NCBI RefSeq assembly: GCF_000150275.1
Contig: NW_002060953.1
Coordinates: 1,670,254-1,734,253 of the forward strand
Length of the DNA: 64,000 nucleotides
Direction of reading: 5' to 3'
From: Trichoplax adhaerens
Taxonomy: Eukaryota; Animalia; Placozoa
This document shows, piece by piece, positions 18,723-61,609 of the stretch (position 1 is the stretch's first letter; every line of letters starts with the position of its first letter). Under the pieces are notes generated by a model. It saw nothing but the letters and a program-made list of their open reading frames with translations. It was not told the origin of the DNA and did no database searches. The position numbers and the translations under genes were made by a program.

Positions 18723-21856
<3,134 letters not shown>

Positions 21857-24815: not shown

Positions 24816-26822
24816 CTAAATCTTTAAAGAATTCGCTAGCTCGTGGTGGATAGAGTCAACGATATTAACGAAGACCCTATATGCTTTAGATCCACATTCT
24901 GGTAAAATATCTAATAGAGCACTAAGTTTTCTATAAAGTGAGCGAAAAATAGTAAATTAGCAAGCGTAATTTATCTTCACGGAGGAGAAATTATTTCTGA
25001 ATTTGATAATCCAAATAATCCCTTAATTCAGTTTATAAAAGTACTTTGCTAAAATTTACGCAAAGCTCCTCATTTTATTGCTAAAGAGAAGTCTTTCTTA
25101 CTTTCGATGGGTTTTCTCCGCCAATATATCTGCTTTTTGTTCTGATGTGATAATTTTTTGGCAAAACAATTCATTTAAGACAGGTTCAACGCTGTATGAT
25201 AAATTCTCAAGTATATTAGTTCTGTTTTCCTGCAGACGCTCTCGATGTTTTTTTGACATACCTGTTATAGCTTTATTAAAAATCACCGGTAATATTACTA
25301 TACGAGATTATAATCAAAAATGAAATTTTTATCTACTATAACCAGTGCAATTTCTACAAAGTATTCGATCAGAGCTAATAAACTGATGGTAATTGACAAT
25401 GAATAAGGTATCTGTATCACAGAAGCATAGATAATTTCATCAGTATTTTAGCTAGTGGTTTATTTCATAAATAGCGATCGTTGATTATGACTAATCTTTT
25501 ACTGTAAAGACGATAATTTGTGCTGGAAGTGGTCAAGTGAACTGCAAAATTTACAATTAATCTACAGATTTTCTACTAAAGCTAAAGAAAATTTGACTCA
25601 ATCTACGGTATGTCTCGATTTAAAATGTAATGTCAAAAAACAGTTCTTCACAACAAACTGACATTAAGAGTAAAGTTCTAACGATTCTTTAATTATTCCA
25701 CTAAATAATATCCATTTGCTGACTTAGTTTAGCTATGTCTATATGATAAGGCTAATTTAATATTGAATTACTTTAGCTCAAGATAATCGTGCAGGTAAAA
25801 ATGTTTAACCATAACTATTGTCTGACATCATGTAAAAATATCAATACTGTATAAATATCTTAGTGCTATATAAGCTGAAAGCAGCAAGAATAGCTATTAG
25901 AGTAGAAGAGACCTAACTTATAGTACCAGTTTGCACTCTATGATTGGCTTTCTTTTAGAGCAAACACGCATGCAATTTTCTATAGCTTAAAATGTGCAAT
26001 TTGATTTAATCACCAGGTGTTTCTATATTTTTTACGGCTCCAACCCCATCATGTGAATCTTGGCCTTGGGCAGTTGAATCTATGATTTGATGTTAGATTA
26101 AAATATTATTAGAGATGTGGTTTAGAATTGCTATGCCTGCAATTATTTATGACGAAGGTAGGCAATATTTAATCTAAGGTATTCAAAAGCATTAAAATAT
26201 TCTCAATAATGTAAGAAATTTTTTATTTCGCTTTTAATATTGGATATTTACGTCAGTTTAAAGTACTCTTGTAGATATATGGCAATAAAATATTTTGAAA
26301 CCTCATCGTTGTAATCAATCTACTCATTCATGTATGAGCTCTTAATCAATTATCTTTATCGAGTAACCTACTAAATTATACATCATTCAAACTGCTGAAA
26401 AATATCAATGATCCATAATTAACATATTATCATTTTACAGCATCTACTAACGTGTACATTGCCAAAATTAATGTAAATTTGTTCTAATCTCGATTATTTT
26501 AGCTATCATTTTAAAATCATTAATTACCACCGCAAGCTTCATTTCTCAGTTTAAGACCTAAATTTTGAAGCGCTGAGGCTTGATTTCCTTGCAATACTTC
26601 ACAGAATTTATCAAAATCCCTATCTTCTTTTCGCTCCAGAAAACGAAGAAATTTCGCATTCTGTTTCTTTTCTGGTTTTATATCTTCCAGTTCATCCATT
26701 TCATCATAATTCAAGACTTTCTTAGTATTTAAATCAATTAAGAGGTGTTTGACAGATAAATCATTAGTAAGTTTCTCCCGATTATTATCGATTACTTTCT
26801 GAATATGATCACTTAAACCCAT
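24816..26822 (-). CDS. Putative CARD-linker-CARD protein (~211 aa); alternatively two separate CARD-only genes
   Basis: Exons 26528-26822 (CARD1, phase-1 donor), 26014-26079 (linker DSTAQGQDSHDGVGAVKNIETP), 25102-25261 (phase-1 acceptor directly before ATG) and 24816-24930. CARD2 reads MSKKHRERLQENRTNILENL...KKLSALLDILPECGSKAYRVFVNIVDSIHHELANSLKI*, which resembles the RAIDD CARD motif LLDILPSRGPKAF. Total 636 nt, in frame. Confidence 0.7.
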
Positions 26823-27807
26823 AGTAGCACTGTTGGTACACCTTTGGTTTAGCTTACAATAACTTGATGCAAGATCCTATTTAAATTATAATCTGAAAAA
26901 TTAATACGAATGCGAATTAATTGCGATAAAAATAAAAAATTGCTATAGATAATGATTTGAATCAAACCATGTTTGATTCTTGTTAGGCCAAGATCGACGA
27001 GATTACATTTAGTATAATTATATTTAGTATAATTAAGCCAATAATTTAGTCTATTTCCTAACAAAAGCGCGTGCTTGTTCAGCTTGATGATCTGAGAGGG
27101 TACAGGCATTTTCATAGTAGTACGCTGATACAATCTGTATATTTATCGCAGATAATTGTATTGCGCTACTAAAATATGGCCGGAAGAGAAAAACAAAGAT
27201 AAAAGGAAGGTGTTTCTAATACTTAATTAGACTGAATTTTACTATATTTTGTCTACATTACTCTATCATTAAGATGCTTTGCATTGCACGATGCTTTTTT
27301 ATTCTACATTCAACTTTGCTAATACAGGAAAATTAGTACTTTCGAAGGAGTAGATCTGATCACTAATTCTCTTCAGATTCAAGTTAAACAACCCTTTACA
27401 TCTAGATTTCATTATCTCGCATCTTTGAAGGTGTAGGCAATCAATGACACCTTACCATAGCATCTCCACTGTGTATTACAAACTTTCCTAGAATATAAAT
27501 GCTCCGATCTATTCTTATGTTAAATTCATATTTAAGGTATATTGGTATGAATTCAAGATAATACACTAAATAGCTTGCAGATATCGATTTGCATCTTAAT
27601 ATACTATAAATATAGGATTGTTACGATGCGTAAGCTCGTCCTAATTATAATTATTGAGTAATATTAAATATTGCTTGTGTGGATTGACGTTTTATTAATT
27701 GTCATTTCTTCATATAACTTGTTTAATCTTTGATTAATATGATAATGCACTGTTAGTGTTGTTGACAATTGATTTAATTAATTAATTATATCATTAAGGT
27801 GTTAAAT

Positions 27808-28298
27808 TGTCACCTCGTGTTTACTAGTTAATCTCTTTATTAATTTATTAATTAAATATCAGTTCTTAACAATAGAGGTTGTTAATTAATTATCTTATAT
27901 GAAGTCTTTAGTGGCAATATTCATAATAATTCCTATAACTTTAAAAGGATACTTTTATATTATATGCACCAGGAGTTTCTGACGAGACTATAAAAGGCTG
28001 ATGCCTGAAGATTCCTTTTTAGTTCGTTAGTCGGTTAGATAGTCAACTAGTTTTCAATTGATATTTAATTGTGAAGACTATAATCTTGGGTGCCAAGATT
28101 CCTTCATTAATAAATGATAGTAAATCTCTGACTATCTCGTCTACATCATCTGTGACGCTATAATTATACCATAGTATTCGGTTGTTGGAACTGAATTAGT
28201 TGGTGATATAACTAATCTCGCCTCTTTAAGTTAGTAAGTGGCGTTCTCCGCAAGGATTGGCGTGTGTAGACTACTTTGTCACTAGTGGTGTGTGACAA
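27808..28298 (-). mobile_element. ~490-bp interspersed element with TGTCAC...GTGACA termini (solo-LTR-like or MITE-like)
   Basis: 6-bp terminal inverted repeats (27808 and 28297) and AATAAA near the minus-strand 3' end. 27895-28298 recurs inverted at 46133-46536. No target-site duplication seen. Confidence 0.55.
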
Positions 28299-29639
28299 GG
28301 ATGTCATGGATTAAGTCTCTGCCGGTTGTTACGAACTATAATCAAACTCAACACTATATAGCGAAAGTAATTCAAGATGTAAACTTTAGTATTTATGAAA
28401 TGGATTGGATATCTGCTGGTAGTTGCAAACTATAATCAAGTTTTAGATTATATAGCAAAAGAACTAAGGATATAATCTTTTAGTAGTTATCCCATACAAT
28501 TTCACCGATAAGTATCCTCAGTAGGTAATGCTAGAGGACACGATTTTTATTCAATTAGCACATAGGTTTCTCTAAATAAGTATTTTAAATCTTAATAATT
28601 ATCTTTTGCTTCTAGGTCAAGCTTGGTGGTTGTTGTGCGTAAGAATCAATTAATGTTGCAATAACGTGGACAAATCTAATTTCTAGATCATATTACTTTA
28701 TAATTGAACAAGTATTCGTCGACAAGATGTTTCTGAGTTATTTTAAATTTGATGTATTATCCAATGTTAATCCTCGAAGAGTAACAAGCGATGGCAAAAG
28801 GCCATGTCTAAATACAGGTCTAGCATATCATGCGAGCAAATCACCAAGTCATGATAACTTGAATTTATGACTTTAATGTATCCTACTTTGCACCTTAGAT
28901 TAGATATTATATTACCTGATCACGTTTTAATAGTAATTAAAATTAGTAAGCTGTTAATTTTTAAAGTCTGAAGTGGACTGATCTCAATGCAAAGCCAATG
29001 CAGAATGTAGTATGAAATGTAAAACACGAAGGATGATGTAAAGAGCCCGTATAAGCAATTAAAAATTTTTTAAGTTTTAGGTGACAAATTTACTGTAGAT
29101 TAGGTGAATGGTTCTCTGGCGATGCTAATACATAAGAATGCAGCAATGTTAAAGCTATCTATAACAAAATGGTTATTCAATGTTGATACTTGAGAATTAG
29201 TAAATAGATCCTTCATTTAAGAATTAAATTACTGAGCAATTTATCGTTTTCATAATTTCCTTTAAAGTACGAAGCAATTTCCTTACCAGCACTTTAGTCT
29301 GGTACTCCAAGTACTTCCTTCCTTGCGAAATAATCCTTCGATAGCAAAGGTCTCTAGCACGATTTCGCATCTGAAACCTATACAAAGTCCAAAAGTTGCT
29401 TGTCCACTATACTATATGCTATCATTTTTGGCATGCGCTGTGGAAATTAGCAATTACTTTCCAAATCATTCTACTATAATAAAAAGCCTTGAGAAAATAG
29501 TATAAAATACTATAGAATTGTTTACTTAATTGACTTAGTACGTGGCGTCCATCTGTGCCACTTGCGAGTAGTGATAGAAATCATTGCAAACTATTCCAAA
29601 AGCGCATACAGTAATAACGACAGGAAGAAGTTATCGTAT

Positions 29640-31285: not shown

Positions 31286-33332
31286 CTATGTATGAGTATA
31301 TTGAAGCTTTTCGACGATATCTTTTCTCCCTATCGCCAATAATACTGGTGCTACAGCTGATGCAGTAAATTTTGTCGGATGTCTCTGAGAAAATTGTTTG
31401 ATGACAGCAAATGCTCTATCAAATTCAGACGAATGATCTTTAGCAATAACATCGGTGTCTATGGCCATATCCAAAGCTAAGGCAAATTTCGCCCAGTCAG
31501 TTCCTATACTGCTTACAATCATCAGCACTAAATTTAGAACGATAAATTATAATATCAGCTGTAAAAATAATAGTCGAACTTAACGAAATGGAATCCCAAG
31601 TATGAATAACAATAAATTATTAGTATGCGCTTTGAGTAAAACTGCATCTTTTACAAGTCATGCTTTCTGAAGGTCATTCAGATGGTAACGAATTACTAAT
31701 GAATTATTTAAGATTAGGGATTGAATTCCTTAACAAAAATCGTAATCTCTGATAAATATCATGAATTACAACCAGCAGTCATGTCATTCACAGTCACCAC
31801 ATTTCTAATGCATATTAGAAGCATTGCCAGTGACAATGAACATAGAAAAGCAGGTGAGTTAAAAATGAAGCAATGAATTTTTGATGGCACTGAGTTTCTA
31901 AAATTATCACCTTGAGGCTGGAAAAGTTGATCAGGAGCCATTTGATTAGGATTCAGTGGCGCATCCACTAGTTATTGTGAATGCCAATAAATTAGAAATG
32001 TAATTTTAAATTTATGATCATAATTTATTCGATAAAATAGCTTCCATTTAACCAAAGCAACGCTTCAACTCATGATATATGAATATAGAAAATCTACCTT
32101 CATCTCCTGAATGCTTTCCTTTAGAAGAACCTATAATGAGCAATTCCAAATGTCTCATATTAGCTATATGTATGTAAAGGTGTTAAATAACACACAAATA
32201 TAGGGGATATAATTTCAAGTAAAAATAGCTAACTAAAGTCTATAATTTCATTTTCACATATGACATGATAATCCATTTAATGCGTAATGGACTAGAAAGT
32301 AAGTTATTCATTCGATAAAAATTTCTACTTTATAGCTCGATATGTTTCCTATAGTAAGATTTTAAACTTTATGCATAAATGCTGTATCTTAAAAATCAGC
32401 AATTCATTCAATATGGCTGAGTTTTATCCATAGAGTATCTTATATGATAATCTTTTATGCAATTAAAGGAGTTATTTGTTGAAGACAACTGGCATTTACT
32501 TTTATCGTCTGGATATAAAGAAACAATTCCACCACCTGCCGGATTGGGGTCTGATAATGAAGACTTACTAGCTTTTCCACCTTCCAGAACAAAAGAATAC
32601 ATGTCGATAATAATAATAATTGATATATAGATTAGTTTGTCAAGTCACTTTTATTAAGACGAAGAGCATAGAATTTATGACTAATTTGCTGGGTATATCT
32701 TGCAAAAATCTAGTTGGTTTTTACTATAATAAATCTATGATATTGCTCTAAAATGCTGTGTCTAGCACACAAACAACTAGGACAGTTTATGATTTTGATA
32801 ATTTAGGAATCTATCTAAATTTGAGCAATTACTAAAAACTATAATTTTTTCTGATTTGATATTAGTATTCAGGAATGAGTTACAAATTTCGGAGATAACA
32901 ATTCTAGGCTAATTATTTTTCTTTAGTCATATCATAATATCGTTTTAAGTTGGTCTATCTACAAGAATCTAATAGGTAGCCAAGGGTTACTACGTCGGTA
33001 AAACAAAAATTTGAATGAAACGCTTTATGTAATTAAGTATTCTTACTAAAACTTTCTTTTTCCATTAGTTTTCCTAATTCTTGAATTGCTGTGGCTTCCG
33101 ATCGTTGCAATAGATAGCAAAATTCAAGCCAGTTTTCATCTGATCGATTCTCTAAAATTCTTATAAACTGAAGGTTTAGACTTTTATCCTGTTGAATCAA
33201 ATATAGTTTATCTGATTCATCATAGGTAATAATTCCAATTAAGTCCGGCAAGATGGTCCTAACGTTTATTTCCTTCATAATCCGATCCCTATATTTAGTT
33301 AGAACTGCCCGGTTTTTATCGTTTAATCCCAT
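31286..33332 (-). CDS. CARD-linker-Death domain adaptor (RAIDD/CRADD-like architecture), ~232 aa
   Basis: Exons 33047-33332 (CARD), 32500-32580, 32098-32130, 31911-31967 and 31286-31527 (DD: IGTDWAKFALAL...LLAIGRKDIVEKL). All introns are phase 1 GT-AG, total 699 nt. The linker contains GDEVDAP. Confidence 0.85.
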
Positions 33333-37500: not shown

Positions 37501-39189
37501 TTACAATTTTCGTAATTCAACGGCTATATCATTTCTGTAAATGGTTCTTAGGGCACTTTCTAATACAGATATAGTGGCTTTAGTTGGATTTTTCTGACTC
37601 CAAATATCCAGGAATGCTTTTGTTTGATTAAATACAGAATGACCATGCTGATATATAATGGTATCTAAATTAATATCAGAATCAAGAAATGCTGCCAGTT
37701 TTGTCCAATCCAAGCCAATTTTATCACATACTATAAAGTACGCTTTCTTCATCTTCTCTTTTGCTAATCGTCAGAAGAAGTGAAAGTCATTATAAACTAA
37801 TTAAAAGTTGTCATGACTTTCTGTAATACTGCCGCTGTGACTTTGTAGCACATAAACTCATGGCTATTTTAACGTTAAAAAAAGATTCTAAGGCTTTAAC
37901 TGACCCAAAGTAAAAACTAATAGTCCATATAATTTACAAATTAGGCAGCTAATGAAGTGCAATAGAATGAAGGATAGCTTAAGACACTAATATAGCATTA
38001 TTTTTTAAATCCATATTAGCGAATAGTAGCATAATATGTATCTTGCTGGCATACTAAACTTAATCTATTTAATTATACAGTCATTAAATCCGATAACTGG
38101 CTATGCATAAAGTTAATCTTTACTTTGGGCTAACGTTAGGCGTAACTAACATTACTTAGTATCATTGCATTCGGCTGAAAGAGCACCATGATTTACGAGC
38201 GTGCTTAGTAATAGCCTAAAAATAGTTTTAAATGTTACAAAGCTATGTAACCCAAGACTTTTAACAAAGCAAATCTCACTATGGTACGTGCAAACCCTTA
38301 ATGTATGTTAATATAAAGTCGGTAATATTTAAGTGTAGAAAATTATGAATGAAACAGCAAGACTGTAGTAAGTAATAGCTATTAGTAATGAATGAAATTT
38401 GTTATCCTTTCTGTGGAATCTAATCTACCAACCTGCATCCTCATTTTCACCTCGATCAACTATGATTTCAAGCAAAGAGCAAGCAAAAATTAGTTATTAA
38501 TTTAGTGCTAAATGACTATCGTATATATTTATATAAGTATTGTAATCCATTAAAACATATCTAAACTACCCGAGGGAATTAAGACTAAAAGGCAAATTTG
38601 ATCAATTAATGTTTAGTCTTAAGCTTTACTCACCGACATCTTCGCTGTTACTACCTAAATGAGAACCTTCAAAATAGTCCAAAAAAAAATAGATGGTATC
38701 ATTCAAGAAAGACATTAGCATAAGCTGTTACATTGAAATGACTTGATCATCTATCAATATGATCATAAAATCATAGTAATATTAGCTGATAATCTCAATT
38801 TATTTCTATGTTTTGCAGTCTAGCAATAATAGCACCATGATTTTATTATTTCGTCCCTGTTATGATATTGCTTACTCGGCTAAATTTATACCTGAAATTT
38901 CTCTGACTTCTGCTTTTAATTTTTTGCCTAAACTTTGAACGGCCGACGCTTGATATTCGATCAATGATAGATAAAACTCTTTGAAATCTTTATCGTCTCT
39001 AGTCCTAAGTATTTTTACAAATTGAAAATTTTTTTCTTTCTTTGTTTTAAAGCCACTTAAAAAATCCACTTCATGTTCGCTTAACACTTTAACAGAATGT
39101 AAATCATATACTATATCGCTTATAGGTGTCTGTGCAATAATTTGCTTCAGATTATTCTCAAGTATGTTTTGATATTCCTTAGACAACAT
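37501..39189 (-). CDS. CARD-linker-Death domain adaptor, ~202 aa
   Basis: Exons 38892-39189 (CARD), 38634-38654, 38433-38459 and 37501-37763 (DD: IGLDWTKLAAFL...LRTIYRNDIAVEL). Phase-1 introns, total 609 nt. The linker contains SEDVVDRG. Confidence 0.85.
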
Positions 39190-42100: not shown

Positions 42101-43537
42101 GCATCTTTTGGTAAATTACTAACGTATTCATTAAATAAACAATTTACGTTCTATTTTAATCGAAACTAATCTCAAAAGTAATAGTACTTTACATAGTTGT
42201 AAATATGCAGGTCAGGAGATGGCAAATGTTTAAAGTAATGCTTCATACTTAACTTTTCTAGCTATATCTCATGCCACTGAAATTATTATCTTTATTGTTA
42301 CCTCATTTACTCAAAAATCCGTTATTTTACAAAATCACTAGGCGTTTTGTAAAACCACTACGTAAGTCTACAAAATCGATTTTAGAATAGTTAGAAACTG
42401 CTTCCAGTTATACTCAACTAAGCAGCATTGTAGAATTAAAATATTGTATTCCAATTACACCTATCCACTCATCACCTTGGAGTAAACGGAAAATGATCAA
42501 ACCTGTAAATACCGTATCTAACACTATGCTAATATGTTACAAAAATATGATAAAGTAAAATGATCTTAATCGTTTCCTCTATAAATGGTTGGATGAAACT
42601 TTCATTATTTCACATTTAAAAAAGATATCAAAATATTACGAAATGCTTTAAATCCATTTATTTAAAAGAGAGACAAGATAACAAAATTGATTGATAAAAT
42701 TATTGAGAGAATATTACCAAATCTAAGCAATTTTCGAAAAAAATTCGAACATTCTTTAGGGAGTTATGTAGGGGTATAAATAAAATAATTACCATTTCAA
42801 ATCATTGATATAGTATATTACATACTGGACTTTTGCAAAATGCATTCATTTATATAAATTATGTAATTTAAATATCGGCATTACTGCCGGAAGGGATGAG
42901 AACACGAGCGTTAAGCTCTAAAGGAAATAAAGCCGTCGAAATAAGAATAATAAGGAAGCTGACAAAGAAGACAGATTAAATAGGGTGGTTTAGTTTGCTG
43001 ATTAATACGATCATTCTTAATAAATGAGTGAAACTTCAAATACAATTAATCAATGAAAAGGAATTAATAAATGGTCAGCATAGTCTATTTTTTTTAGAAA
43101 AAATCGACTAATAACTTTCGAAAGGAAGTAATTACTGCTATACTTGGAGGTACCAGTTCAGGTTGGCATTCAAGATTCTATAATGTTACATTATAAGAAA
43201 AAATTACATCAGTAGCTTAAACAAAATTTTGAAACTGAGTAACGTATGAAGAGCTAACAATCTTAGTTATTTATCAATCATCTTTAGGCGTTAAAAAACC
43301 ATGGCCAATGATATATCGGTTGCTATTCGTTATATCTCTTAAAATTTAAACTTATAATTTATCGATTGCTGAAATTAGCAATTTGTTTAGTTAGCCAGTT
43401 ATAGCATGTACCGTATCACGAGTGAGAAAATGCACCGGTGAATTTTCTATATGAAAGGAGTACGTCAAAAATCAACATGAAATCTTTACATGATAAACTT
43501 ACTATGTATCCCATTTAAACCTTGAGTACTCGCCATT

Positions 43538-45080
43538 CTATTGTTTGTCGACTTTGAGGAAAAGAAGAATGATAGTTATAAATTAATTTTAGTGAATTAT
43601 ATAGTTGCATATGACAATTCATTCTGGATAACTTCAATACTTACCAACATCTGCTCCTAACTCTCCTATCACCATCGAATCATCGGAGATTACGATGGAA
43701 ATAAATTAAATGAAATTAATATTTAATATTTAATAAATCATTTAAAAGTCCATTTAAAAGATTTAGCTATCATTAGTAGTCTAGATATGATCCAGTATTG
43801 TTACAGGCAATTACCTCCTTTATTTCCTTCTGCAAGGGAAAGATTGTAAAGGAATTAGCAGATATTATTAATAAATTAAGTTACTTTAAGACCTTATATC
43901 TCGTAAATTTGTTGCAATCAAATACAAAATTTACACTGTTAGAGAAAAATTTGCCATATAAACCTCAATGCTATCTTATGTAAATACTGAAGTTTGATGA
44001 TGTTATCCTAACCTATAATCAGACATTTATTGCTTGAGTAGATACTGTAAACTTTTTATACAAAATAAGTATAAAGTGATTTAGCAGCAAGAATTACGTA
44101 GCAGCTTGCATCTAAAAAAATTTTAAATTTAAAATAATACTGATAGTATTATCCTACCTATATTTAGATATTTACCTAAAATGATCAGTTTAACAGCAAG
44201 AACAACTAAAGCCATGATATAACTACTGTAATTGCTCTAAAAATTTCTCAATGCAATCACCAGTTATTTTTATGTATAGTACTTCAAATGTAAGAATAAA
44301 AGCTCTACCTTGGAATAAATCTACATCAACTGAACGAGGGAGTTTTAATTTGCTACTGAAGGTGGGCTGTATAGAAAACTATTTGATTGGGATTTATTTA
44401 TACTTTAATTGTACAAATTATAAGAAATGGATAGCAGAAGTTATATTTGGGTCTACGAAGCTGTAGCATGATACATTATAACGATATTGCAGCCAACTGA
44501 AAGTGGTCAATTTTGTTTGATATTCCAGATATAAGTGTCTATTTTTGAGTTACTGTATTCCATTAAACCTGCTATTGTCATAGTCTATCGCGCTCATACC
44601 GGGAAAACTTATATTATTTCCGTAGATGTCTACATCAGGTAATGTTTTTGGATTTTCTATATGGTAGACGTCAAAATATATAAGATAGAAAAAGTTTCAT
44701 CATTATTGCTTGAAGCTGAATCATCAAAATCTGTGTCTAACGCTTCTAAACATCATTTTCTTATAACTACCAATATTTGCCTTACCTTCAGTGTCCAATT
44801 GCAGTTTTGCTCCGAAAGCTTTGACAACGTTGACATGGTGCTGTTTTAGCAAGCTACAGAAAGTATAGAAATCCTCATTTGAACGTTGTTCTTGTAAGAT
44901 TTCCAATAGCCTTCCGTTCATATCTTCAACATGAGTTAATTTTTCTATATCGATAATATCTCTACTACTTAGAATTTTTTTAACTTTCAATTTTGTAAAT
45001 AACTCTTTGATTGGAACAATTTTGATAAATTCTTCTGCGTATTTATCAAGATTAGCTTTAATAATGTCACTTAATTCCAT
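43538..45080 (-). CDS. CARD gene truncated after the linker (CARD-only product or pseudogene)
   Basis: Intact CARD exon 44786-45080, roughly two-thirds identical to the CARD at 61318-61609. Candidate phase-1 micro-exons 44600-44656, 43815-43829, 43645-43665 and 43521-43551; the last reads VDKQ* (TAG 43538-43540). No DD exon found downstream by eye. Confidence 0.6.
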
Positions 45081-46132: not shown

Positions 46133-46536
46133 TTGTCACACACCACTAGTGACAAAGTAGTCTACACACGCCAATCCTTGCGGAGAACGCCACTTACTAA
46201 CTTAAAGAGGCGAGATTAGCTATATCACCAAATAATTCAGTTCCAACGACCGAATACTATGGTATAATTATAGCGTCACAGATGATGTAGACGAGATAGT
46301 CAGAGATTTACTATCATTTATTACTGAAGGAATCTTGGCACCCAAGATTATAGTCTTTACAATTAAATATCAATTGAAAACTAGTTGACTATCTAACCGA
46401 CTAACGAACTAAAAAGGAATCTTCAGGCACCAGCCTTTTATAGTCTCGTCAGAAACTCCTGGTGCACATAATATAAAAGTATCCTTTTAAACTTATAGGA
46501 ATTATTATGAATATTGTCATTAAAGACTTCATATAA
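46133..46536 (+). mobile_element. Truncated second copy of the 27808-28298 element, opposite orientation
   Basis: Reverse complement of 27895-28298 with about 10 mismatches over 404 bp, counted by eye. Confidence 0.8.
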
Positions 46537-49500: not shown

Positions 49501-50533
49501 TCACATATTTAAATAATTATGTATGAACATGTTAACCTACAGTTGGATAGACAACGGATAAGGCTGAAAACTAAACCTGATAGCACCAACGATTTAGATA
49601 GACTACGGCAACATGAATAGATTTCTGCAATACTGTTACAGTGTTAAATACTATATTACAGTAGAAATAACTATGTTAGGATAATTCTGTTAGACTATCC
49701 TTATTTAGTTAACTTCTAATTTGGATATACTGTGTTTTAATATAGCACTGACTTTTTATGACAGTGACACTTATACACATACTGAAATTAATAGTTATAA
49801 TAGGGAATGCAAATCATCTGCTTACAGTTCCAATCATTGTGATTGTAATTTACTTATGGTAGACTGTAAGTTATCATGGAAATGTTCCGTGATAGGACAT
49901 ATCGTAATCTGACTATTCTGTATTAGTTATTACATGTCTATGTTGGTAAATACTGTTGTCTGCATTAAGGGAGCAGTAGCTAAAATTAATATCTAATTCA
50001 GTAAATGATTCTAATGTTAATTGTATTAACTATGACTCATGAACTATTGAGGAATAGTATATAAATGCAGTATATCGTGAAATAAAGATGAATTGTCCAA
50101 CTTAGTGTTTAACGTAAAATACGAGGCGTTTAAGTCTTTGTGTAGTCTGCTAGTAGAGCAAAAGTGTTTGTGATAGTGCAGATATCGTTCCTTGATACGT
50201 GGTTCAAGGAATTGACTTATTGATCGTAGATTAGGTTATCTTGTTGCAAAGCTGTTTTGTGACAAATACCTAACAAGATAGTTGATGAATCTGACTCTTG
50301 CAATTCACTAAAAAGTAAAGAACAATATAGGTTTGCATTAACGGTAATCGTTTCATTAGAGTTACTTATTATGATTACCAAAAAAATTGGTACAAGATCA
50401 TAACTGAAATGACTTAGTAAATCTAAGTTAGATTTCACTTCTGAAATGGTAGTTTCCTTTCTCAGTTATTACAATTTAAAAAATCCATAAATCTTACATC
50501 AACAAATTGACGAGGCTTCATATTTTAAGGTAT

Positions 50534-53500
50534 TTATGAATCATACATAAGAGTGACAATCTCTTTCCTTTCGATTTCAAAGAGGGCTTGCACTAGACGG
50601 GTTGTAGTAGCCTCAATACTTTCCATATTATGCCATTTCTTCAACATAGTTCTTGCCTGATCATACACTAATCTTTTTTCCTCTATTATGATATCAGTGT
50701 TAATTTTGTAATTTAGCTTTAAAGCTAGCTTAGTCCAATCAGTACCAATGTGATCCGCAACGATGAAAAAATAGTTTCTAACGTCAGTTGAAAGTTCTAT
50801 TATGAAATAAAAAGTTTTGTTCCTTGTTTAATTTGAAGTATTCTAGATAGTAACCTTAATTATTAATATAGCTAACGAACTGATACTTATTTACTATTTC
50901 AACATTTATTTTTAGAAATACACCGTATGTGTTAAGACTTATAAGACGTTATGATGCATCCAATATCTCTAAAATGGGTATTGCAAAAATCTATGCCTAT
51001 TACTGAACACTTCATTAGCTATATATATAGATCAGATATTATAAATAGTGTCTAATTGCGATAGTACCATTTTGTGAAGGATGTAAGATTAACTGTATTT
51101 CAAGAGTGATAATAGTTGTTAATAGATTGTTAACATTTTACTTCAAACTGTCCTTATTCAGTTATACTTTGTACGTCCTAATTGAAACCTTTTTCCTTAT
51201 CCGTAGTCGTTTTATTTGATTCAAAATTATTTAAAGCAAATAAAAGTAATTGTATGTTTAATGTATCTTTAAGTAATTTAGTCCATAAATACAGTCTAAC
51301 GTTTTGATGTGTAGTAAAAGATATGCATCTCTAATCGGTGAAAATAATTAACTTAGCAAAATTGCGGAAGCGATCAATAACATTTTTTAAATCATTGCTG
51401 TTACTTTATAACAACTTTACAATGTAATCATCCTTTGTTAAATACTGTCCAAAGCGCTGGGCTAAGTCTTATTCTTAGTTATTAAGTTAATAAGTCGTAA
51501 AATAAGAATATAGTTCACCTTTTACGTGAGCTTTGTTCGTAGTTTCATGATCCTGACAGTCGCTATCTTGTGATGTATTCTCATCGGGTGGTTTAGAATT
51601 GGCAGATTGAAAACCTTCATGATCTATGGTAGTTGTGGGATTTTTTTGCATTAATAGTTGATTTACGGGCAGATCTTCTACCGTTTGCTGAATGATGAAT
51701 TGATTTTGCTTCATGTTGGAAATGTCATATTGGATACAATCTAACTGCCGCTTTATGTCTTTTTGACATTTCAATGATTTATCTTGACTCATTTTTATCT
51801 CATCGGCCTTTTGAAGAAAAGCATTACTCTCTTGAAGAAGAGCGTTAATCGACTTCCAATAGCGTTGATCATTTGAGTTAGTTGAAATGAATTCTTCATC
51901 AGTGATCATGTTCTGAAACTTTGTAATCATCTTTTCCATATCGCTAAATCTCCTTTCATCTAAGCATTGATTAATCAAATCCTTAAACTGATCCATTTGA
52001 TCTTTAATTAAGTTTGAAATATTCTCTGTTAGTAATCTCGTGATTGTGCTTATTTGATCATCATTGATCGTAGCAGAGACTTCTTCTTTATCTTTCAGCA
52101 GAGCCGCATTTAAAACTTGTTGAGCGTAACTAATAAAGAATTCTCTATCGAGATTCCCGCTTAATTTGCTTTGATAATTGAACAGCATTTGGGGGCTGCT
52201 CATAATTTGCTGAGTAATATCGTTGAGGCCACAAATAAAGTCTCTACTGTTGCCATCATGGAAGAATGATAATTGTCGGAAGCCATAATGATCAGTTTTC
52301 TCATAACGTTTCAGGTCGTAATACTTGAAAGAATTATCTACCTCTATTCTAATCCCAGTATTCAAAACTAAGTCGGACGAATAAATTTTTGAAAGTTCTT
52401 CGTTTTCCTTCAAGGCGATTTTTAATTTACTTCCTTTCTTTCCTTTGTACCTACAACTGGATTATAATTCGAATAAACATTTAGTGTAGCATCGCCAAAT
52501 TATTGTCATTAAACAAGCCTGTTAGAAAACTTATTATTGTCAGCATGCTGTGTACAAGTAAATTAGATACCACTTAAAAATTATGTCTGATTGAGGGCTG
52601 TAGATAATAATAGGTAGAGATAACTTTATAATAAATCAAGTATATTGATTCAGCTTCGAAGAATGTAATACCAATGATACATATTCATTCTCATTCTCAA
52701 TTATATAAGTGTTGAGACTCGTTGTTTGCAATCAGTATGTTGTAAACAAGTCAGATAAGGTGTTAAACCTGCTATATTTTTCTGTGGTGACTGCTCTTAG
52801 TCCTTCTTTCTTATCATCTACTTTTGCAAGTTGTTTTCCTTGTCTGTCAGAGTTTGTTGTACTAATGCATAGTATATCTCAATCATTGAAGAATCATTTT
52901 AAAATTTATAATTGTAAAATTCTTCGTGTGATTTTCTCTCTGGGTAAAGTAAGTAGACATAATTTGTTACAATACAGCTAGCTTATAATTAGGCTATTAC
53001 CGTAGGCATGTATTATTCATTACTGACGAAATCCTTTTTGATAATGGTAGCTTTCGAAACCTAATATCTATCCACAACCCATTTAAATCCTATCTTTTGT
53101 AAGTAATCAATTAGTGAAATATTGATTTCGGTATAAGATCTGGCACTATTAAAAGATTGTGGGAACTTTCTAAGAGCATTTTTTCTAGTTAAAATGCTCT
53201 TCTAATAACTATTTCCGTTCTGACAGAATTGGTTCTAGTTTGCCTTTAATCTACAGATAACTTGTTCACCAACGCGTGAGATCTGCTTAGCCATAAAATT
53301 TGTTAGTTTCCTTCATTCCACTATAACTTAATTAATAAAGTAATTTTACACTTATACTCTGATATCTTCACATATTTAAATGTAGTTAAATATTGATTTC
53401 AACATAAGACACTATTAAAAATTTATAAGCGTACTATAAAAAGTATCTTCTCTAATTATTTACTTGAATAATTACAGGATAATGATACGAGATTGACCAA

Positions 53501-54128
53501 CGAAAAATTTTAATTTAATTTTAATTAACCTGTGCTTTATGACAAAATTTGGTTCAATAATGCATTTGCTGATAAATTTGGCAAAACTAAGTGGTTCTTT
53601 CGGTGGTTTATCTTTCTGCTCTATAATATAAGCGATGATGGCTTCGATCATATCTTCAGCCAGTTTCTTAATATAGTGATTATCGTATGCGTCAGAAATG
53701 ATAGATATTTGTTGCTCGTAGATTCTGACGAGATCGCAAGCTATCATCGATATAGCCAATTCAACGCGATCATTGTTGGGAGTTAGATGATCAATGATTT
53801 TCTTAATTGACCTACGATCATATCTTTCGGCAATTTCTGAAATTAAAGTTTGTATTAATGACATTCCTTGAACTAAATTAAACGGACCATCTGTAGGGAC
53901 AAATTGTAAGCACGATAGGATACCAGTCAAAAATTGTGTTGCAGTATTTGCAATCATCCCAGGCTTTAACTTAATTTCTTTTTCCAGGACTTGAGATAAA
54001 ACTTTTAATTTGATGGTAAACTTCTGAATAAAAGTGATTAAAAATTGTTTAATCTTTGGTCCGTTTTTGAATTGACTGATATTATCAAAGTCTTCTGGCC
54101 ATTCTTTCTTCTCTTGCATATTTGCCAT
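50534..54128 (-). CDS. ~628-aa protein: uncharacterised helical N-terminal domain, coiled coil, acidic linker, C-terminal Death domain
   Basis: Exons 53530-54128, 52769-52861, 51519-52450 and 50534-50796 (intron phases 2, 2, 1; total 1887 nt). The last exon is absent from the ORF track and reads ELSTDVRNYFFIVADHIGTDWTKLALKLNYKINTDIIIEEKRLVYDQARTMLKKWHNMESIEATTTRLVQALFEIERKEIVTLMYDS*, paralogous to the other DDs. Confidence 0.75.
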
Positions 54129-57400: not shown

Positions 57401-57749
57401 GTCGAACGGTAATACTATCTGTTAATTATTAACAAATGAGTACATTATCGTAAACCTTCAGCAAAGCGACGTGAATTGTACTAGTATAAATTAAACCTAG
57501 CCTGAAGAACTAATGTTGGCCGAATTAGCCTAACCATTACAAATGATTCTTTACTAGCACATTTTGCATACGTAACCGCGTGTTGCAAATAGTCGATTGC
57601 ATGACATACAACTACTTCGTTGATAAGACGCTAAATGTCTCAAAGTCTAACATAGATACATAGGCGTCTATCCTAATAATCTGCCTATCTCATGATATTT
57701 TGTAACGAAACTAAGTATTGTGAAAATAGACTTTTAGTCACGTTAGTGA

Positions 57750-59140
57750 GATGTACGGAAGCATAACTTTCTATATCCATCTTAAGACGTATTTGGTAGC
57801 ATGGACGGTAATGGTAGATTCTATGCTATAGTACAGCTGACTATATATAGTAAGGTTTTGAGTTACTATTAAGGTTAGAGGTAAAAATAAAACTGTAATT
57901 CATATATTAGAATATGCTTAGTTTACCTTACTTTGGCTGCTAAGAATAATATTCAGGGCAATACTGTAGTTGTTTCCACATCGGGTTAATGATGATCTGC
58001 TGTAACTTCAACTTCTAGATTGTAATTCAAGCCTATACAAAGCTTTAATTTCCTCAGATGACTATCGATTTTCGCCCTTTCGAGGAACTTGTGCCAAATT
58101 AGCTATAGCATTATTTAATACATAACTTTATTAATGAATCTACTATACAAATGAATCTCAATTCTAGGGATTACTAAGCCTTAGCTTAGAAAAGTGAATT
58201 AACGTCACAATCCACATTTTACTTTTTAAAAATTCGTATAAGCTGTTATGGTAAATTGATCCACTTAATAACGTAATCATGGCCCTTTTACGCATAACGG
58301 AGGTCGGAACAACCTTAACTTAAACAGAATTAAATGGCCAAAAAGCTTGAAATACCCTAGGATATTAATTTTTATAAACCGTGTCGTAGAATTTAAAGTC
58401 GCTTTACTGAATTCTACCGAACAAAATCGTCATTTTGGATTAATGATATTTATGACTCGAAAAAATCCTTGTTTGGCTCTTTCTTAAACTGTAAATTCTT
58501 ACGTTGCAATATTTTACATTATTTGATTTATTTGTACTTAGCCAACTCATGCTAGAAATCATCCAAATCTAAATCTTTGAAAGAGATGGTTGGTGATATA
58601 CGAGAAGTATCATGTTTATAAGAAATAATATTAGCCAATCTATTGGAAATCTGAATCTTATACGATTAATATTAGTAAATATGATAATTCAAACCAATTA
58701 TACTGGCTACATTTTAATACATCTAATAAGTAATATAATACTTGATTTTGTATACAATGGTCTTATAAGTATTTGACGACTGTCCTAAGTTACCCTGAGT
58801 TACCAGCTTAGAGTTGCAATATGATATGATTAGGTATTTGTAATGTAACTAGTATTGTTATTGTAGACTGCTAGTCATGTTTAGTATAATGTACGGTAGA
58901 TATTATCCTAAGATATATTTGGTAGCTAGAACTATAGACTGTAGTGGTAGAGACTCTATGCTAGAGTACAGATGACTATATACAGTAAGCTGTTGAGTTA
59001 CTAATATAGCTATAGGTAAAAATAGAACTGTAAATCATATATTAGGATATGGTTAATTCATTATACTTTGGCTGGTGTGAATAATATCTACGTAAGTACT
59101 GTAGTCGTATCCATATTGGATTAATGATGGTCCGCAGTAG
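57750..59140. repeat. Dispersed direct repeat pair (~57750-58004 and ~58890-59140)
   Basis: Collinear blocks ATTTGGTAGC...CTATGCTA.AGTACAG.TGACTATATA.AGTAAG...GGTAAAAATA.AACTGTAA.TCATATATTAG...TTAATGATG in both copies, roughly 80% identical by eye. Confidence 0.8.
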
Positions 59141-60204
59141 AATAATCTTACTAAGAATAATTTAACTAAGTGTAAAATAAGGTAAAAGGTGCCATGCGGA
59201 TTGTAGCTGCGAATGCTACGAAAAGTATAAAAGCATGCAACTTTAGATTATTCTGTTAGTTCGTTCTAGAAGTCTTTAGTAGTAGTAATCGGCTAGAGTA
59301 GAGCTGTGTGTAGTTAATCTTTGTATAAGATTCAATAAAGTCCTTATTTTTCTAAATTTTGGAATTTCGTGATTGGGATATATCACAGTATTAAACTATA
59401 TTTTATATCCATTCCAAATATCAACAATACAATTATGAGTAGATTCATTTTATTACTACAGCAGAACAGAACCAAAGGATAATATTTGTCACTCAACCAA
59501 TATAAGAACGATAGCTAGAGTATTCTTCAAGGATTTTAAGGTAGTATTATCAAATATTTGTATGGGATAAACATAAACCATTAGCGCATTAAAACTTAAA
59601 ATATATTATAATTTAGAAGTCTTAAAATTATTTTAGTGATAGTGTTATTTAATCATTACAATTTAGAAAATAAAAAATTGCAATCAAGTTCGAACTAAGG
59701 GGTAATCCTTAAAAATTAATTTACAGCCAAAAATTAAAAGTAATACGAAAATAACTAAATTTGTTTCTTGAATGTCGTCATTTTATTTTGCTCAAGCTAT
59801 TTCCCGTCTGAGTAGATCTTGCTTGCAAAACTTGACGTATTGAATGATCTAATCGATTTATTACTTCGATAAAACCAATTAGAAATACTCCCGGATACAG
59901 AGTTCCTTTGATTTTATCAGTTTCTATTCGCTGATTGATTGTCCTTGGTTCCATTATTTGCCCCGAAAGAGAAATTTTCATTGATAATTTACCTAAACTA
60001 ATGAATAACATTTAAGAATATTTAAATCTACCAAGATGATTCTGTTGGTGTACTAAAAATCAATATAATGTCAAATTTTTATTCTTAATTTACAAAAATC
60101 TACTAGCACTTAAGTGGCCGTAACTTTCTTCAAAGTATGAAACTCAACTATTGCATTACAAGGAAGCGAATGTAAGGAAGGTAATTAGAAAACTAGAAAA
60201 TAAA

Positions 60205-61609
60205 TTACTTAACACTCACGAAATCTTTCACAATATCTTTCCTGTCAATTGCAATAAGCACTTTTACTAAAGCTTCAGTGGTTGCTTCATTACCGGACAT
60301 GTTATACCATTTGCTCAAGACCGCTTTTGCTCGATTGAAAACCACACTTTGCTCCTCTGCAATAACACCTACATCTATATTTTCGTTAAGCTTGCCCGCT
60401 AATCTAGTCCAGTCATTACCAATTTTGTCGGCGACAGTGTAAAAGTAGCCCTTCACATTAGCTAAAATTTCCATGAAATCATTTTGAAATAAGATTGGGT
60501 AAGATTAATTTCAATTAGATACTTTAGCGGTATTTCTAGAAGCAAGATTGAACAAATGTAGCTATCCCTTAAACTTGTCTAATTATATTATCAATCCTTA
60601 TATGTCTTGAATTTGCATGATTTCAGTGATAGAAGCTTAATACAGTAATTAATATTAAACATCGATACCAAAATCACTCAGATGTACTTGTTATCGTAAT
60701 CTAACCTGACAATGTTGATTCTACTTCCATCGGTGAGTCAACTGTATGAATAGAGATCATATTAAATTTAGATCACTTACTTGGAATTCATGTATGAACT
60801 GAACATTTTACGTTGTATATTGCTTAAATTTATAGTAGCGCTATAACTTAATTTCCTTGAAAGAAATACTAACCAACATCTTGTCCATTAGGATCTATGA
60901 TTAGTGAGATCGTTGATAGATTTTAATCCATATTTAACAAATCAGATCAGTATTAATAAATAGCTCATAGTATTTCTTTAGTAATTAGTATAATCTAGTA
61001 TTATCAGGGCTACAATAATCATTATACTTTCTATCAGTAGCTATCTCTAATATTACTTCCTTGCTTGCAAACAAGAAGGACAAGCTAGATTCAATAAATT
61101 AACTTACTTGTTCGGTGATCTTTCCGTACTAGCTTGATAGGCGTTCCTGCAATTATGAAATCAATTAGTTTAGGTATAGACCACTAATATATAAAATTGG
61201 CAATTCTAGTAATAAATATAGATCAATTTAATTAGGAAGGGTTAGAGTTCACTTATCAATATAGCACTATTATATTATTCATGCAATAATATTCACTTCA
61301 ATTGAAAGATTGTTTACCTTTAGCATCATCCTGTAGTTTAGCACCGAAAGATTTCACAACATTAACACCATTGCTTTTAAGTAAGTCACAAAACGTATAA
61401 AAATCCTCTTCTGCACGTTCTTCCATTAAGATTTCTAATAGCCTTCCATTCATATCTTCTGTGTGGGTTAAAGCTTTGATATCCGTCACTTGTCTTGTAC
61501 TCAATATCTTTTTCATTTTGAGCCTAGTAAACAATTCTTGGATAGGAACAATTTTAAGGAATTGATCACTATTTTTATCCAATGCAGCCTGAATGTCTGG
61601 ATTGTCCAT
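60205..61609 (-). CDS. CARD-linker-Death domain adaptor, ~214 aa
   Basis: Exons 61318-61609 (CARD), 61108-61146, 60874-60894, 60706-60741 and 60205-60461 (DD: IGNDWTRLAGKL...LIAIDRKDIVKDF). Phase-1 introns, total 645 nt. The linker contains GQDVVDSP. Confidence 0.87.

What the first reader, a model, noticed from the sequence alone, without database searches (positions are those of the whole stretch)
24816..61609. Tandem cluster of six co-oriented death-fold genes: an expanded RAIDD-like adaptor repertoire
Seen: 6 CARDs and 4 DDs in ~37 kb, all on the minus strand, forming three CARD-DD genes, one CARD-CARD, one truncated CARD and one X-DD. Most paralogs are strongly diverged but keep open frames. 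Established: CARD+DD is the architecture of RAIDD/CRADD, the single-copy PIDDosome adaptor that recruits caspase-2 in vertebrates. Inference: a lineage-specific, diversifying innate-immune or cell-death locus in which different CARD/DD pairs wire different sensors to different caspases.
Basis: partly seen in the sequence, partly recalled or inferred. Interest (0 to 1): 0.8.

Follow-up and report, generated by a model that had tools for sequence, protein, structure and literature searches.

The report
Tandem CARD/Death adaptor genes in Trichoplax
A stretch of the placozoan Trichoplax adhaerens genome carries a real head-to-tail row of small genes built from CARD and Death domains; they copy the layout of the vertebrate adaptor RAIDD but are not its orthologues, so this is a lineage-specific, modular adaptor family of a kind known from other invertebrates.

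Summary
The window is Trichoplax adhaerens scaffold C1404. Between 24816 and 61609, all on the minus strand, lie six CARD and four Death-domain (DD) exons.

They form these genes:
- Three CARD-linker-DD genes: G1 (214 aa), G4 (206 aa) and G5 (243 aa). Independent H1 and H2 gene models support the exon joins.
- One CARD-only gene, G3.
- One gene, G2 (656 aa), with a helical head, a coiled coil and a DD.
- One CARD-plus-tail gene, G6.
- One unannotated split CARD, G7. It could be spliced to G6 to give CARD-CARD; the frame is open but the join is unproven.

Every mapped intron between modules is phase 1. The row continues about 80 kb past the window, reaching 12 CARD and 9 DD exons plus a CARD-TIR gene.

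The genes are RAIDD-like in layout only:
- The DDs match ankyrin and FADD DDs, not CRADD's.
- The CARDs interleave with those of the expanded Apaf-1-like NB-ARC genes.
- No non-placozoan CARD+DD protein was among the ten top hits checked.

Wiring to "different caspases" is not supported, because few caspases here carry a CARD. Old paralogues look constrained; young ones have dN/dS near 1. The scan had already noted related death-fold exon shuffling elsewhere in this genome.

The parts
60205..61609 (-). G1: CARD-linker-DD gene of 214 aa with 5 exons. Exons: CARD 61609-61318; micro-exons 61146-61108, 60894-60874 and 60741-60706; DD 60461-60205. All introns are phase 1.
   Evidence: The H2 orthologue model TrispH2_011164 (P0001) maps with 2 mismatches and GT-AG introns. 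On P0001, Pfam Death scores 40 bits and CARD 20 bits.
50217..54128 (-). G2: 'X-DD' gene, 656 aa in the H2 model. It has a helical head ORF (54128-53472), a coiled-coil-like ORF (52413-51487), a DD exon (50767-50543) and a terminal exon ending at 50217.
   Evidence: The H2 gene call of 656 aa carries PF00531, and its start and end map exactly to 54128 and 50217. The DD scores 45 bits. The head and coil have no Pfam family. About 10 head paralogues exist, some upstream of NB-ARC exons. I did not resolve the internal exon borders (timed out).
42868..45080 (-). G3: CARD-only gene of 133 aa. Exons: 45080-44786 (complete CARD), 44656-44600 and 42917-42868. Introns are phase 1. No DD.
   Evidence: TrispH2_011162 (P0002) maps with 1 mismatch. 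Pfam CARD scores 23.2-23.7 bits. No DD relic lies downstream.
37501..39189 (-). G4: CARD-linker-DD gene of 206 aa. Exons: 39189-38892 (CARD), 38666-38634, 38459-38433 and 37763-37501 (DD). Introns are phase 1.
   Evidence: The partial H1 model TRIADDRAFT_59576 (P0004) joins the CARD tail to the DD. Extending it to the ATG gives 206 aa, the length of the H2 call, which carries CARD (weak) plus Death. Pfam CARD scores 28.7 bits and Death 48.9 bits.
31286..33332 (-). G5: CARD-linker-DD gene of 243 aa. Exons: 33332-33047 (CARD), 32580-32500, 32163-32098, 31967-31911 and 31527-31286 (DD). Introns are phase 1.
   Evidence: TrispH2_011160 (P0006) maps with 0 mismatches. The AlphaFold model shows two helical bundles with pLDDT of 86 or more and a disordered linker at 103-154. 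Foldseek matches the N-terminal domain to the Apaf-1 CARD (TM 0.86) and the C-terminal domain to ankyrin and FADD DDs.
26006..26822 (-). G6: CARD plus a short tail, 122 aa in the H1 model. Exons: 26822-26528 (CARD) and 26079-26006. The intron is phase 1. The tail exon holds an alternative phase-1 donor (G|GTGATT after 26014) just before its stop.
   Evidence: TRIADDRAFT_59574 (P0005) maps with 0 mismatches. Pfam CARD scores 34-35 bits. No gene is called here in H2.
24816..25261 (-). G7: unannotated split CARD of 90 aa. Exon A runs from the ATG at 25259 to 25102 (GTAAG donor, phase 2). Exon B runs from 24930 to the stop at 24818-24816. A phase-1 acceptor (AACAG|) ends at 25262, so a G6-G7 CARD-linker-CARD product of 211 aa is possible.
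   Evidence: Pfam CARD scores 24.2 bits over profile positions 2-53 for exon A alone, and the array profile scores 42.6 bits. The sequence was read directly. The joined frames are open. The frames are also intact in H2. There is no annotation in H1 or H2.

Best explanation
This is the proximal third of a row of at least 13 co-oriented death-fold genes, about 117 kb long (C1404:1695069-1812302), in Trichoplax adhaerens. Its core is a placozoan family of small two-headed adaptors: a single-exon N-terminal CARD, a disordered linker made of two or three micro-exons, and a single-exon C-terminal Death domain. Because the introns between modules are phase 1, the modules are interchangeable. The same row also holds CARD-TIR, CARD-only, possibly CARD-CARD, and head/coiled-coil-DD genes.

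Shown: the domains, the exon joins in the gene models, the array itself, the phases, and the non-orthology to CRADD.

Inferred:
- The proteins act as homotypic bridges or regulators. Their DDs would dock on DD-tailed proteins such as the ROCO GTPases and the in-array X-DD protein.
- Their CARDs would dock on CARD-headed proteins, chiefly the many Apaf-1-like NB-ARC ATPases and the one or two CARD-caspases.
- The CARD-only members would act as competitors.

The family grew by old tandem duplication of whole genes, plus exchange of single domain exons with other death-fold genes.
For: - Domains: Pfam, profile and fold evidence.
- Joins: five CARD-DD gene models from two annotation projects map with GT-AG introns and 0-2 mismatches.
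- Phases: all 15 introns between modules mapped in G1, G3, G4, G5, G6, TRIADDRAFT_59584 and the CARD-TIR gene are phase 1. The only others are the phase-0 intron inside the TIR and the phase-2 intron inside G7's CARD.
- Extent: a profile scan of the window plus 90 kb finds 12 CARD and 9 DD exons, all minus strand, plus one short CARD-like fragment on the plus strand.
- CARD-TIR member: TRIADDRAFT_59582 in the same row is CARD + TIR.
- Whole-gene duplication: the CARD and DD trees agree for genes a and b and for G1 and gene c. The DD of G2 groups with the DDs of its neighbour G1 and of gene c, starred 96/92.
- Exon exchange: keeping the array CARDs as one clade costs 28.5 lnL (p-AU 0.03), and NB-ARC-linked CARDs nest among them.
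- DD partners: one of the closest non-array DDs follows a COR-A (ROCO) exon.
- Constraint: old pairs have dN/dS 0.10-0.35 with synonymous sites near saturation. All frames are intact in both H1 and H2. Several members have their own closest counterpart at 46-59% identity on unnamed AT-rich contigs.
- Lineage restriction.
Against: - No transcript or protein data were available. The joins rest on gene predictions.
- G6 and G7 have no H2 model.
- Young duplicates (a vs b; the DDs of G1 vs c) have dN/dS about 1.0-1.1. The H1-H2 comparison (13 nonsynonymous against 6 synonymous changes, ratio 0.55) cannot exclude neutrality.
- Relatedness of CARDs or DDs does not show that they bind each other. No interaction was tested.
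- DD monophyly of the array is not rejected (p-AU 0.15), so exon exchange is shown only weakly, and for the CARDs alone.
- The 'counterparts' on unnamed contigs are domains, not proven orthologous genes. One of them lies 1.5 kb upstream of a P-loop exon.
Confidence: 0.65

Rival explanations
1. The genes are true CRADD/RAIDD homologues, multiplied. Each copy would bridge a PIDD-like DD protein to a caspase-2-like CARD-caspase, as in the PIDDosome.
For: - The layout and size match (CARD then DD, 206-243 aa).
- The RAIDD CARD is the third-best solved-structure match of the CARD profile at 25.7 bits.
- Two neighbouring caspase genes exist, one with a Pfam CARD match (below its cut-off) just upstream; Kamm et al. 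2019 (PMC6321704) describe two CARD-caspases.
Against: - The CRADD DD is not matched by the DD profile at E<=1 or by P0001 at E<=0.1, while ankyrin and FADD DDs are. It is matched by another Trichoplax CARD-DD protein, P0142.
- The RAIDD DD ranks 45th structurally.
- The CED-3 CARD (30.7 bits) scores above and the Apaf-1 CARD (23.6) about the same as the RAIDD CARD.
- No non-placozoan CARD+DD protein was found among the ten top hits I looked up.
- A separate candidate CARD-DD locus exists on C1408, which I could not fetch.
Confidence: 0.1
2. Most copies are functionless by-products of tandem duplication, drifting neutrally and not yet hit by stop codons.
For: - dN/dS is about 1 in the youngest pairs.
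- The H1-H2 ratio of 0.55 rests on 19 changes and is not clearly different from 1.
- G6 and G7 are not called in H2.
- I found no transcript evidence, and no paper names these loci.
Against: - Paralogues with saturated synonymous sites still have open frames, intact splice sites and dN/dS of 0.10-0.35.
- G5, the weakest by Pfam, folds with pLDDT above 90 in both domains.
- Several members have their own closest counterpart at about 50% identity in other AT-rich genomes.
Confidence: 0.12
3. The small proteins are mainly inhibitors, not bridges. CARD-only and CARD-DD proteins would cap or poison CARD and DD filaments, like the vertebrate CARD-only proteins, and so set thresholds for the many Apaf-1-like apoptosomes.
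For: - There are two clear CARD-only genes (G3 and the gene at C1404:1748990), plus G6 and G7 if these are not spliced together. None has a DD relic.
- The CARDs belong to the same family as the NB-ARC-linked CARDs.
Against: Seven members keep both domains, with a conserved DD at 25-49 bits. A pure CARD decoy would not need a DD. No functional data exist either way.
Confidence: 0.13

Closest known systems
RAIDD/CRADD (PIDDosome adaptor)
   Same: It has an N-terminal CARD, a flexible linker and a C-terminal Death domain in a protein of about 200 aa with no other domain.
   Different: The DD here is not of the CRADD type by sequence or fold rank. The genes are multi-copy and tandem, not single-copy. 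No non-placozoan CARD+DD relative was seen among the ten top hits checked. Partners are unknown.
Other bipartite death-fold adaptors (FADD, ASC, MyD88)
   Same: Two homotypic interaction modules are joined by a linker. The array DDs match the FADD DD at 34 bits and TM 0.80.
   Different: The domain pair differs: CARD+DD rather than DED+DD, PYD+CARD or DD+TIR.
Placozoan 'MyD88-like' CARD-TIR proteins and the Apaf-1 paralogue expansion (Kamm et al. 2019, PMC6321704)
   Same: - One member of this same row, TRIADDRAFT_59582 (H2 counterpart TrispH2_011522), is CARD+TIR. That is the architecture the paper describes for two H2 proteins.
- The array CARDs are of the family found upstream of NB-ARC exons.
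   Different: The paper and its held supplements do not mention the CARD-DD genes or the array. I could not confirm that TrispH2_011522 is one of its two proteins, because the locus tags are only in a figure.
Lineage-specific expansions of death-fold genes in invertebrates
   Same: - The pattern of many diverged death-fold genes is the same.
- A 2007 comparative study reported that apoptosis-network genes single-copy in vertebrates have multiple paralogues in the cnidarian-bilaterian ancestor (PMC2246300, abstract only).
- A 'CRADD-like' DD gene is listed as MAMP-induced in a sponge (PMC6208332).
- The expansions in amphioxus, sea urchin and cnidarians are cited from my own knowledge.
   Different: Here the expansion is a co-oriented tandem row with uniform phase-1 modularity and swapped C-terminal modules. 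The lineage is placozoan.
CARD-only proteins (ICEBERG/COP type; from my own knowledge)
   Same: G3, the gene at C1404:1748990, and G6 and G7 if unspliced, are CARD-only products.
   Different: There is no sequence kinship beyond the CARD fold. They derive from, or sit among, adaptor genes rather than caspase-1 duplicates.

Membership tests
Death domain (Pfam PF00531) | Score above the curated cut-off (22.6 bits) over most of the 86-position profile. | tested here: met
   All four window exons score 25-49 bits over profile positions 3-84. The full models P0001, P0006, P0003 and P0004 score 24-47 bits.
CARD (Pfam PF00619) / CARD fold | Profile score above 23.9 bits, or a six-helix CARD fold superposing on solved CARDs. 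| tested here: met
   G6 (35 bits), G4 (28.7) and G7 exon A (24.2) pass. G3 (23.7), G1 (21.6) and G5 (CARD_2 only, 19) do not. The G5 model superposes on the Apaf-1 CARD at TM 0.86 and rmsd 1.6 A over 94-95 columns. All six belong to one profile family at 43-123 bits.
CRADD/RAIDD orthologues | CARD followed by DD in one polypeptide of about 200 aa. | tested here: met
   G1, G4 and G5 are 214, 206 and 243 aa, by gene models of two projects. No cDNA evidence is available.
CRADD/RAIDD orthologues | The DD is closest to the CRADD DD among death domains. | tested here: not met
   The DD profile scores ankyrin-3 at 59 bits, FADD at 34 and PIDD at 20. The CRADD DD is absent at E<=1 and absent for P0001 at E<=0.1. 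The CRADD DD is in the library and is found by P0142. The RAIDD DD ranks 45th in Foldseek.
CRADD/RAIDD orthologues | The CARD is closest to the RAIDD CARD. | tested here: inconclusive
   Scores are CED-3 30.7, RAIDD 25.7, CARD8 24.5 and Apaf-1 23.6 bits. Structurally the Apaf-1 CARD is best.
CRADD/RAIDD orthologues | Recognisable full-length relatives in other animal phyla (a conserved orthologue group). | tested here: not met
   In the profile search of 1.84 billion representatives, the three hits covering both CARD and DD in one stretch (P0013, P0020, P0142) are Trichoplax, as are two further CARD+DD hits (P0031, P0102). The non-placozoan hits I looked up are long death-domain proteins matched in the DD part of the profile. 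Only the best 150 of 609 hits were visible, and I looked up names for 30 of them.
CRADD/RAIDD orthologues | Binds the PIDD DD and the caspase-2 CARD. | not testable with these tools
   No interaction prediction or assay was available.
TIR adaptors (MyD88-like CARD-TIR) | A TIR domain in the same product as the CARD. | tested here: met
   This applies only to the array member outside the window, TRIADDRAFT_59582. TIR_2 scores 74 bits and CARD 26 bits, and the model maps to C1404:1763834-1765766. No window gene has a TIR.

The most novel reading that the evidence does not exclude
The row is a combinatorial 'switchboard'. One type of CARD exon is paired, through phase-1 introns, with interchangeable DD, TIR or CARD output exons. 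Each adaptor would couple a particular DD-tailed ROCO sensor, TIR protein or head/coiled-coil effector to a particular member of the dozen Apaf-1-like ATPases. This would give placozoans, which lack LRR-type NLRs and true TLRs, a specificity layer made of adaptors. Exon-level presence/absence differences between the H1 and H2 lineages would show it is still being rewired.
Probability: 0.2. Interest if true: 0.7.

Novelty: new member of a known kind. Interest (0 to 1): 0.42.

Why it matters
Placozoans are among the simplest animals. Kamm et al. 2019 report that they lack LRR-containing NLRs, true TLRs, RIG-I-like receptors and cGAS-STING, yet have a large Apaf-1-like expansion. A tandem family of at least 7 CARD-DD adaptors, sharing its CARD type with those ATPases and sitting beside CARD-TIR and effector-like X-DD genes, supplies candidate wiring between sensors and cell-death machinery.

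It also shows that the RAIDD layout can be assembled independently by exon shuffling. 'CRADD-like' annotations in early-branching animals should therefore not be read as evidence of a PIDDosome. The finding is useful for annotation and for choosing proteins for interaction screens. It does not overturn current views.

Tried and rejected
- Length-only enumeration of exon chains for G5 gave 7 models. This was settled only when the 243-aa database protein was retrieved.
- The same enumeration for G2 timed out, so its internal exon borders are not given.
- X head: there was no Pfam family and no usable ESM Atlas hit. The single-sequence AlphaFold model was unusable at pLDDT 37, so no fold search was run on it.
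- The G7 half-domain exons gave nothing informative against solved structures. 'RAIDD-like CARD' for G7 is therefore unsupported.
- I looked for DD relics after the CARD-only genes and for a CARD upstream of the DD at ext 83431. Neither was found.
- I tried to fetch the candidate CRADD-type locus on C1408, the CARD-caspase locus and the canonical Apaf-1 locus. I did not try another route.
- I treated best hits on unnamed Logan/ENA contigs as orthologues, then withdrew that. One such CARD (L077) lies upstream of a P-loop exon, and the counterpart of G6 (L074) shows no second CARD or DD within 2.5 kb.
- The first mixed MSA (A5) misaligned the DD-only rows and was not used.
- The literature holds no mention of these locus tags or of CRADD in Trichoplax.

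My own joined models were only translated inside scripts to check frames: G4 (206 aa), G7 (90 aa) and the hypothetical G6+G7 fusion (211 aa). They were not searched as joined sequences. Searches were made exon by exon by reference, or with database proteins. Nothing in the window looked human.

Full report
**Source**

The window is G000:C1404:1670254-1734253, from a 105.6-Mb assembly of 1414 contigs with about 31% G+C. C1404 is 2,399,976 bp long. That is the same length as the contig carrying TRIADDRAFT_59574, 59576, 59582 and 59584 of Trichoplax adhaerens. The orthologous contig of Trichoplax sp. H2 (NOWV01000296.1) is colinear with the window and 99.1-99.6% identical. Nothing in the window looked human.

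Pfam Death is above its cut-off on four minus-strand exons. Pfam CARD, or the family's own profile, finds six minus-strand CARD exons. Three of the CARDs fall at or below Pfam's cut-off. The weakest, G5, was modelled from a 42-row alignment:
- Residues 1-100 and 160-243 are helical bundles, with 10-residue block means of 92-97 in the first and 86-95 in the second.
- Residues 103-154 are disordered.

In the fold search the N-terminal bundle superposes on the Apaf-1 CARD (TM 0.86, rmsd 1.6 A). The C-terminal bundle superposes on ankyrin and FADD DDs (TM 0.74-0.80). From genome-wide densities (at least 118 DD and 71 CARD-type matches), about 0.07 such exons are expected in 37 kb, against ten seen.

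**Gene models**

Database proteins from two independent annotations map onto the window with GT-AG introns:
- G1: 214 aa, TrispH2_011164.
- G3: 133 aa, TrispH2_011162. It has a CARD and no DD.
- G4: 206 aa. The H2 call carries CARD(weak) plus Death, and the partial H1 model TRIADDRAFT_59576 joins the CARD tail to the DD.
- G5: 243 aa, TrispH2_011160.
- G6: 122 aa, TRIADDRAFT_59574. It has a CARD plus a short tail.
- G2: 656 aa in H2, with PF00531. Its ends map exactly to 54128 and 50217.

The refutation test 'CARD and DD exons are never joined' is therefore not met at the level of gene prediction. No cDNA evidence was available to me.

Downstream of G6 lies an unannotated but intact CARD, G7. 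It is split by a phase-2 intron and ends at 24816. A weak donor (G|GTGATT, of the same GTGAT type as the donor of G5's last intron) sits just before the stop of G6. A phase-1 acceptor sits just before G7. Together they allow an open 211-aa CARD-linker-CARD product. Against this join:
- H1 annotates the stop.
- H2 calls no gene there.
- The nearest foreign counterpart of the G6 CARD shows no second CARD within 2.5 kb.

I rate the CARD-CARD join at roughly even odds. My own joined models were only frame-checked inside scripts and were not searched as joined sequences.

**Architecture rule**

Every intron between modules that I could map is phase 1. This covers G1, G3, G4, G5, G6, TRIADDRAFT_59584 and the CARD-linker-TIR junctions of TRIADDRAFT_59582. 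The exceptions are both inside domains: a phase-0 intron in the TIR and the phase-2 intron in G7's CARD. The domains are otherwise single symmetrical exons, and the linkers are micro-exons of 7-27 aa.

**Extent of the row**

A profile scan of the window plus 90 kb finds 12 CARD and 9 DD exons on the minus strand (one further short CARD-like fragment lies on the plus strand), ending at C1404:1812302. Beyond the window the row contains:
- four more CARD-DD genes;
- one CARD-only gene;
- one DD without a detected CARD;
- TRIADDRAFT_59582, which is CARD + TIR (TIR_2 at 74 bits).

CARD + TIR is the architecture that Kamm et al. 2019 call MyD88-like (PMC6321704). That paper and its held supplements do not mention the CARD-DD genes. 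No paper in the library names these loci or links CRADD to Trichoplax.

**Relation to RAIDD/CRADD**

The DD profile matches ankyrin-3, ankyrin-2 and ankyrin-1 DDs (59, 46 and 39 bits), FADD (34), NRADD, TRADD and PIDD (20). It does not match the CRADD DD at E<=1. The same holds for G1's H2 orthologue protein (P0001) alone. As a control, another Trichoplax CARD-DD protein from elsewhere in the genome (P0142) does find the CRADD DD. The CARD profile scores CED-3 at 30.7, the RAIDD CARD at 25.7 and Apaf-1 at 23.6 bits, which does not discriminate.

A profile of four full-length members was searched against 1.84 billion representatives and gave 609 hits. The three hits that cover both CARD and DD in one stretch are Trichoplax proteins. 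The named non-placozoan hits (amphioxus, Acanthaster, Stylophora, Holothuria) are long death-domain proteins matched in the DD part of the profile. I conclude that the genes share RAIDD's layout but are not members of the CRADD family. A candidate CRADD-type locus on C1408 could not be fetched.

**Kinship inside the genome**

The CARD type of the array has at least 71 matches genome-wide. At least 11 of them lie 0.7-5 kb upstream, on the same strand, of NB-ARC matches. These are the Apaf-1-like paralogues of Kamm et al.

In the CARD tree the array falls into two deep clades, both of which contain non-array CARDs, and a group of non-array CARDs that includes NB-ARC-linked ones nests among the array members. 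Forcing the array into one clade costs 28.5 lnL (p-AU 0.03). For the DDs, one clade is not rejected (p-AU 0.15).

The CARD and DD trees agree for genes a and b and for G1 and gene c, which indicates whole-gene duplication. The DD of G2 groups with the DDs of G1 and gene c (starred, 96/92), which suggests copying of a single exon. One of the closest non-array DDs follows a COR-A exon, so it belongs to a ROCO GTPase. This fits earlier scan notes on DD-tailed ROCO genes.

The head of G2 has about 10 paralogues. Some lie upstream of NB-ARC exons (C1332, C1363, C1381). One neighbouring pair on C1392 also has a DD between the copies. Its fold remains unknown.

**Selection**

| Comparison | Result |
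|---|---|
| H1 vs H2, pooled over all window genes | 13 nonsynonymous and 6 synonymous changes; pN/pS 0.55; underpowered |
| Old pairs: CARDs of G1/G3, G1/c, G5/G6 | dN/dS 0.10-0.35 |
| Youngest pairs: a/b CARD and DD, G1/c DD | dN/dS 1.0-1.1 |

This could reflect either relaxation or diversification after duplication. I cannot separate the two.

Several members have their own closest counterpart (46-59% identity) on unnamed contigs of 29-31% G+C from SRA runs. This suggests the domain lineages are old. Gene-level orthology is not shown, because one such CARD precedes a P-loop exon.

**Mechanism**

Shown: these are two-domain death-fold proteins with a disordered linker, arranged in a tandem, modular family.

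Inferred:
- They act as homotypic bridges or competitors between DD-bearing proteins (ROCO tails, X-DD) and CARD-bearing proteins (Apaf-1-like ATPases, CARD-caspases).
- A CARD-TIR sibling links the row to TIR signalling.
There are only 11 Peptidase_C14 exon matches, at a handful of loci, and only one has a Pfam CARD match (below its cut-off) just upstream.

**Verdict**

The finding is real and correctly described. Its interpretation needs two corrections: the genes are not CRADD homologues, and the likely CARD partners are NB-ARC proteins rather than many caspases. It is a new, unannotated-by-function member set of a known kind, the lineage-specific expansion of death-fold adaptors. It is of moderate interest.

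Noticed in passing
window 1282-4152 (+) and 7999-10797 (+): Two intronless class C GPCR genes of 956 and 932 aa. Each carries ANF_receptor, NCD3G and 7tm_3. They are tandem and on the opposite strand to the death-fold row.
   Followed up: partly
window 18723-19115 (+) and 16187-16477 (-): The proximal border of the array is marked by housekeeping exons: a class I Glu/Gln tRNA-synthetase exon and an Alg9-like mannosyltransferase exon. The synthetase is also called in H2.
   Followed up: partly
G000:C1404:1763834-1765766 (L004:9581 to L005:1513), minus strand: TRIADDRAFT_59582 is a CARD-linker-TIR gene inside the same row. A second TIR copy, 65% identical, lies at C1404:1790906-1791944 (L007:6653-7691).
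   Followed up: partly
G000:C1404:1805215-1812302 (L009) versus H2 locus L079: H1 and H2 differ in structure at the distal end of the row.
- H1 has two tandem CARD-DD copies, separated by a 2.2-kb assembly gap.
- H2 has one gene. Its CARD is 97% identical to the CARD of copy b, but its DD exon has no counterpart in the H1 stretch examined. The 470 bp holding H1 copy b's DD exon are absent from H2.
This may be real exon turnover or an assembly artefact.
   Followed up: partly
window 46133-46535: An indel of about 400 bp separates H1 and H2 in the spacer between G2 and G3.
   Followed up: no
G000:C1408:4640602-4641213 (+) and G000:C1368:19825-20043 (+): A caspase-domain match lies inside an open frame reported as 14081 aa. 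A Death-domain match lies inside an open frame reported as 5795 aa. The fetched stretch around the C1368 match (L034) is open in all three frames for more than 500 codons, which looks like a masked or N run. These long frames may therefore be artefacts.
   Followed up: no
G000:C1412:5381549-5381929 (-) and 5386232-5386468 (-): A Peptidase_C14 exon has a Death-domain exon 4.3 kb upstream on the same strand. This could be a DD-caspase.
   Followed up: no
G000:C1408:2458570-2460094 (-): A separate CARD (Pfam 30.6 bits) and DD (40 bits) pair lies 1 kb apart on the same strand. It is the best remaining candidate for a CRADD-type gene, but I could not fetch it.
   Followed up: no
L077:1757-2164 and 3670-3924 (Logan SRR30664515): On an unnamed contig of 31% G+C, a CARD 54% identical to G1's CARD lies 1.5 kb upstream of an exon with a Walker A motif (GMPGSGKT). 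The closest foreign relative of an adaptor CARD therefore seems to head an NB-ARC-type gene.
   Followed up: partly
G000:C1332:6585-14090 (-), C1363:12598-16867 (+), C1381:25313-29142 (-), C1392:319871-331019 (+): Paralogues of the G2 head (23-56% identical) lie upstream of NB-ARC exons on C1332, C1363 and C1381; C1332 also has a coil match. On C1392 two head-plus-coil copies have a DD match between them. The module seems to be an exchangeable N-terminal unit.
   Followed up: partly
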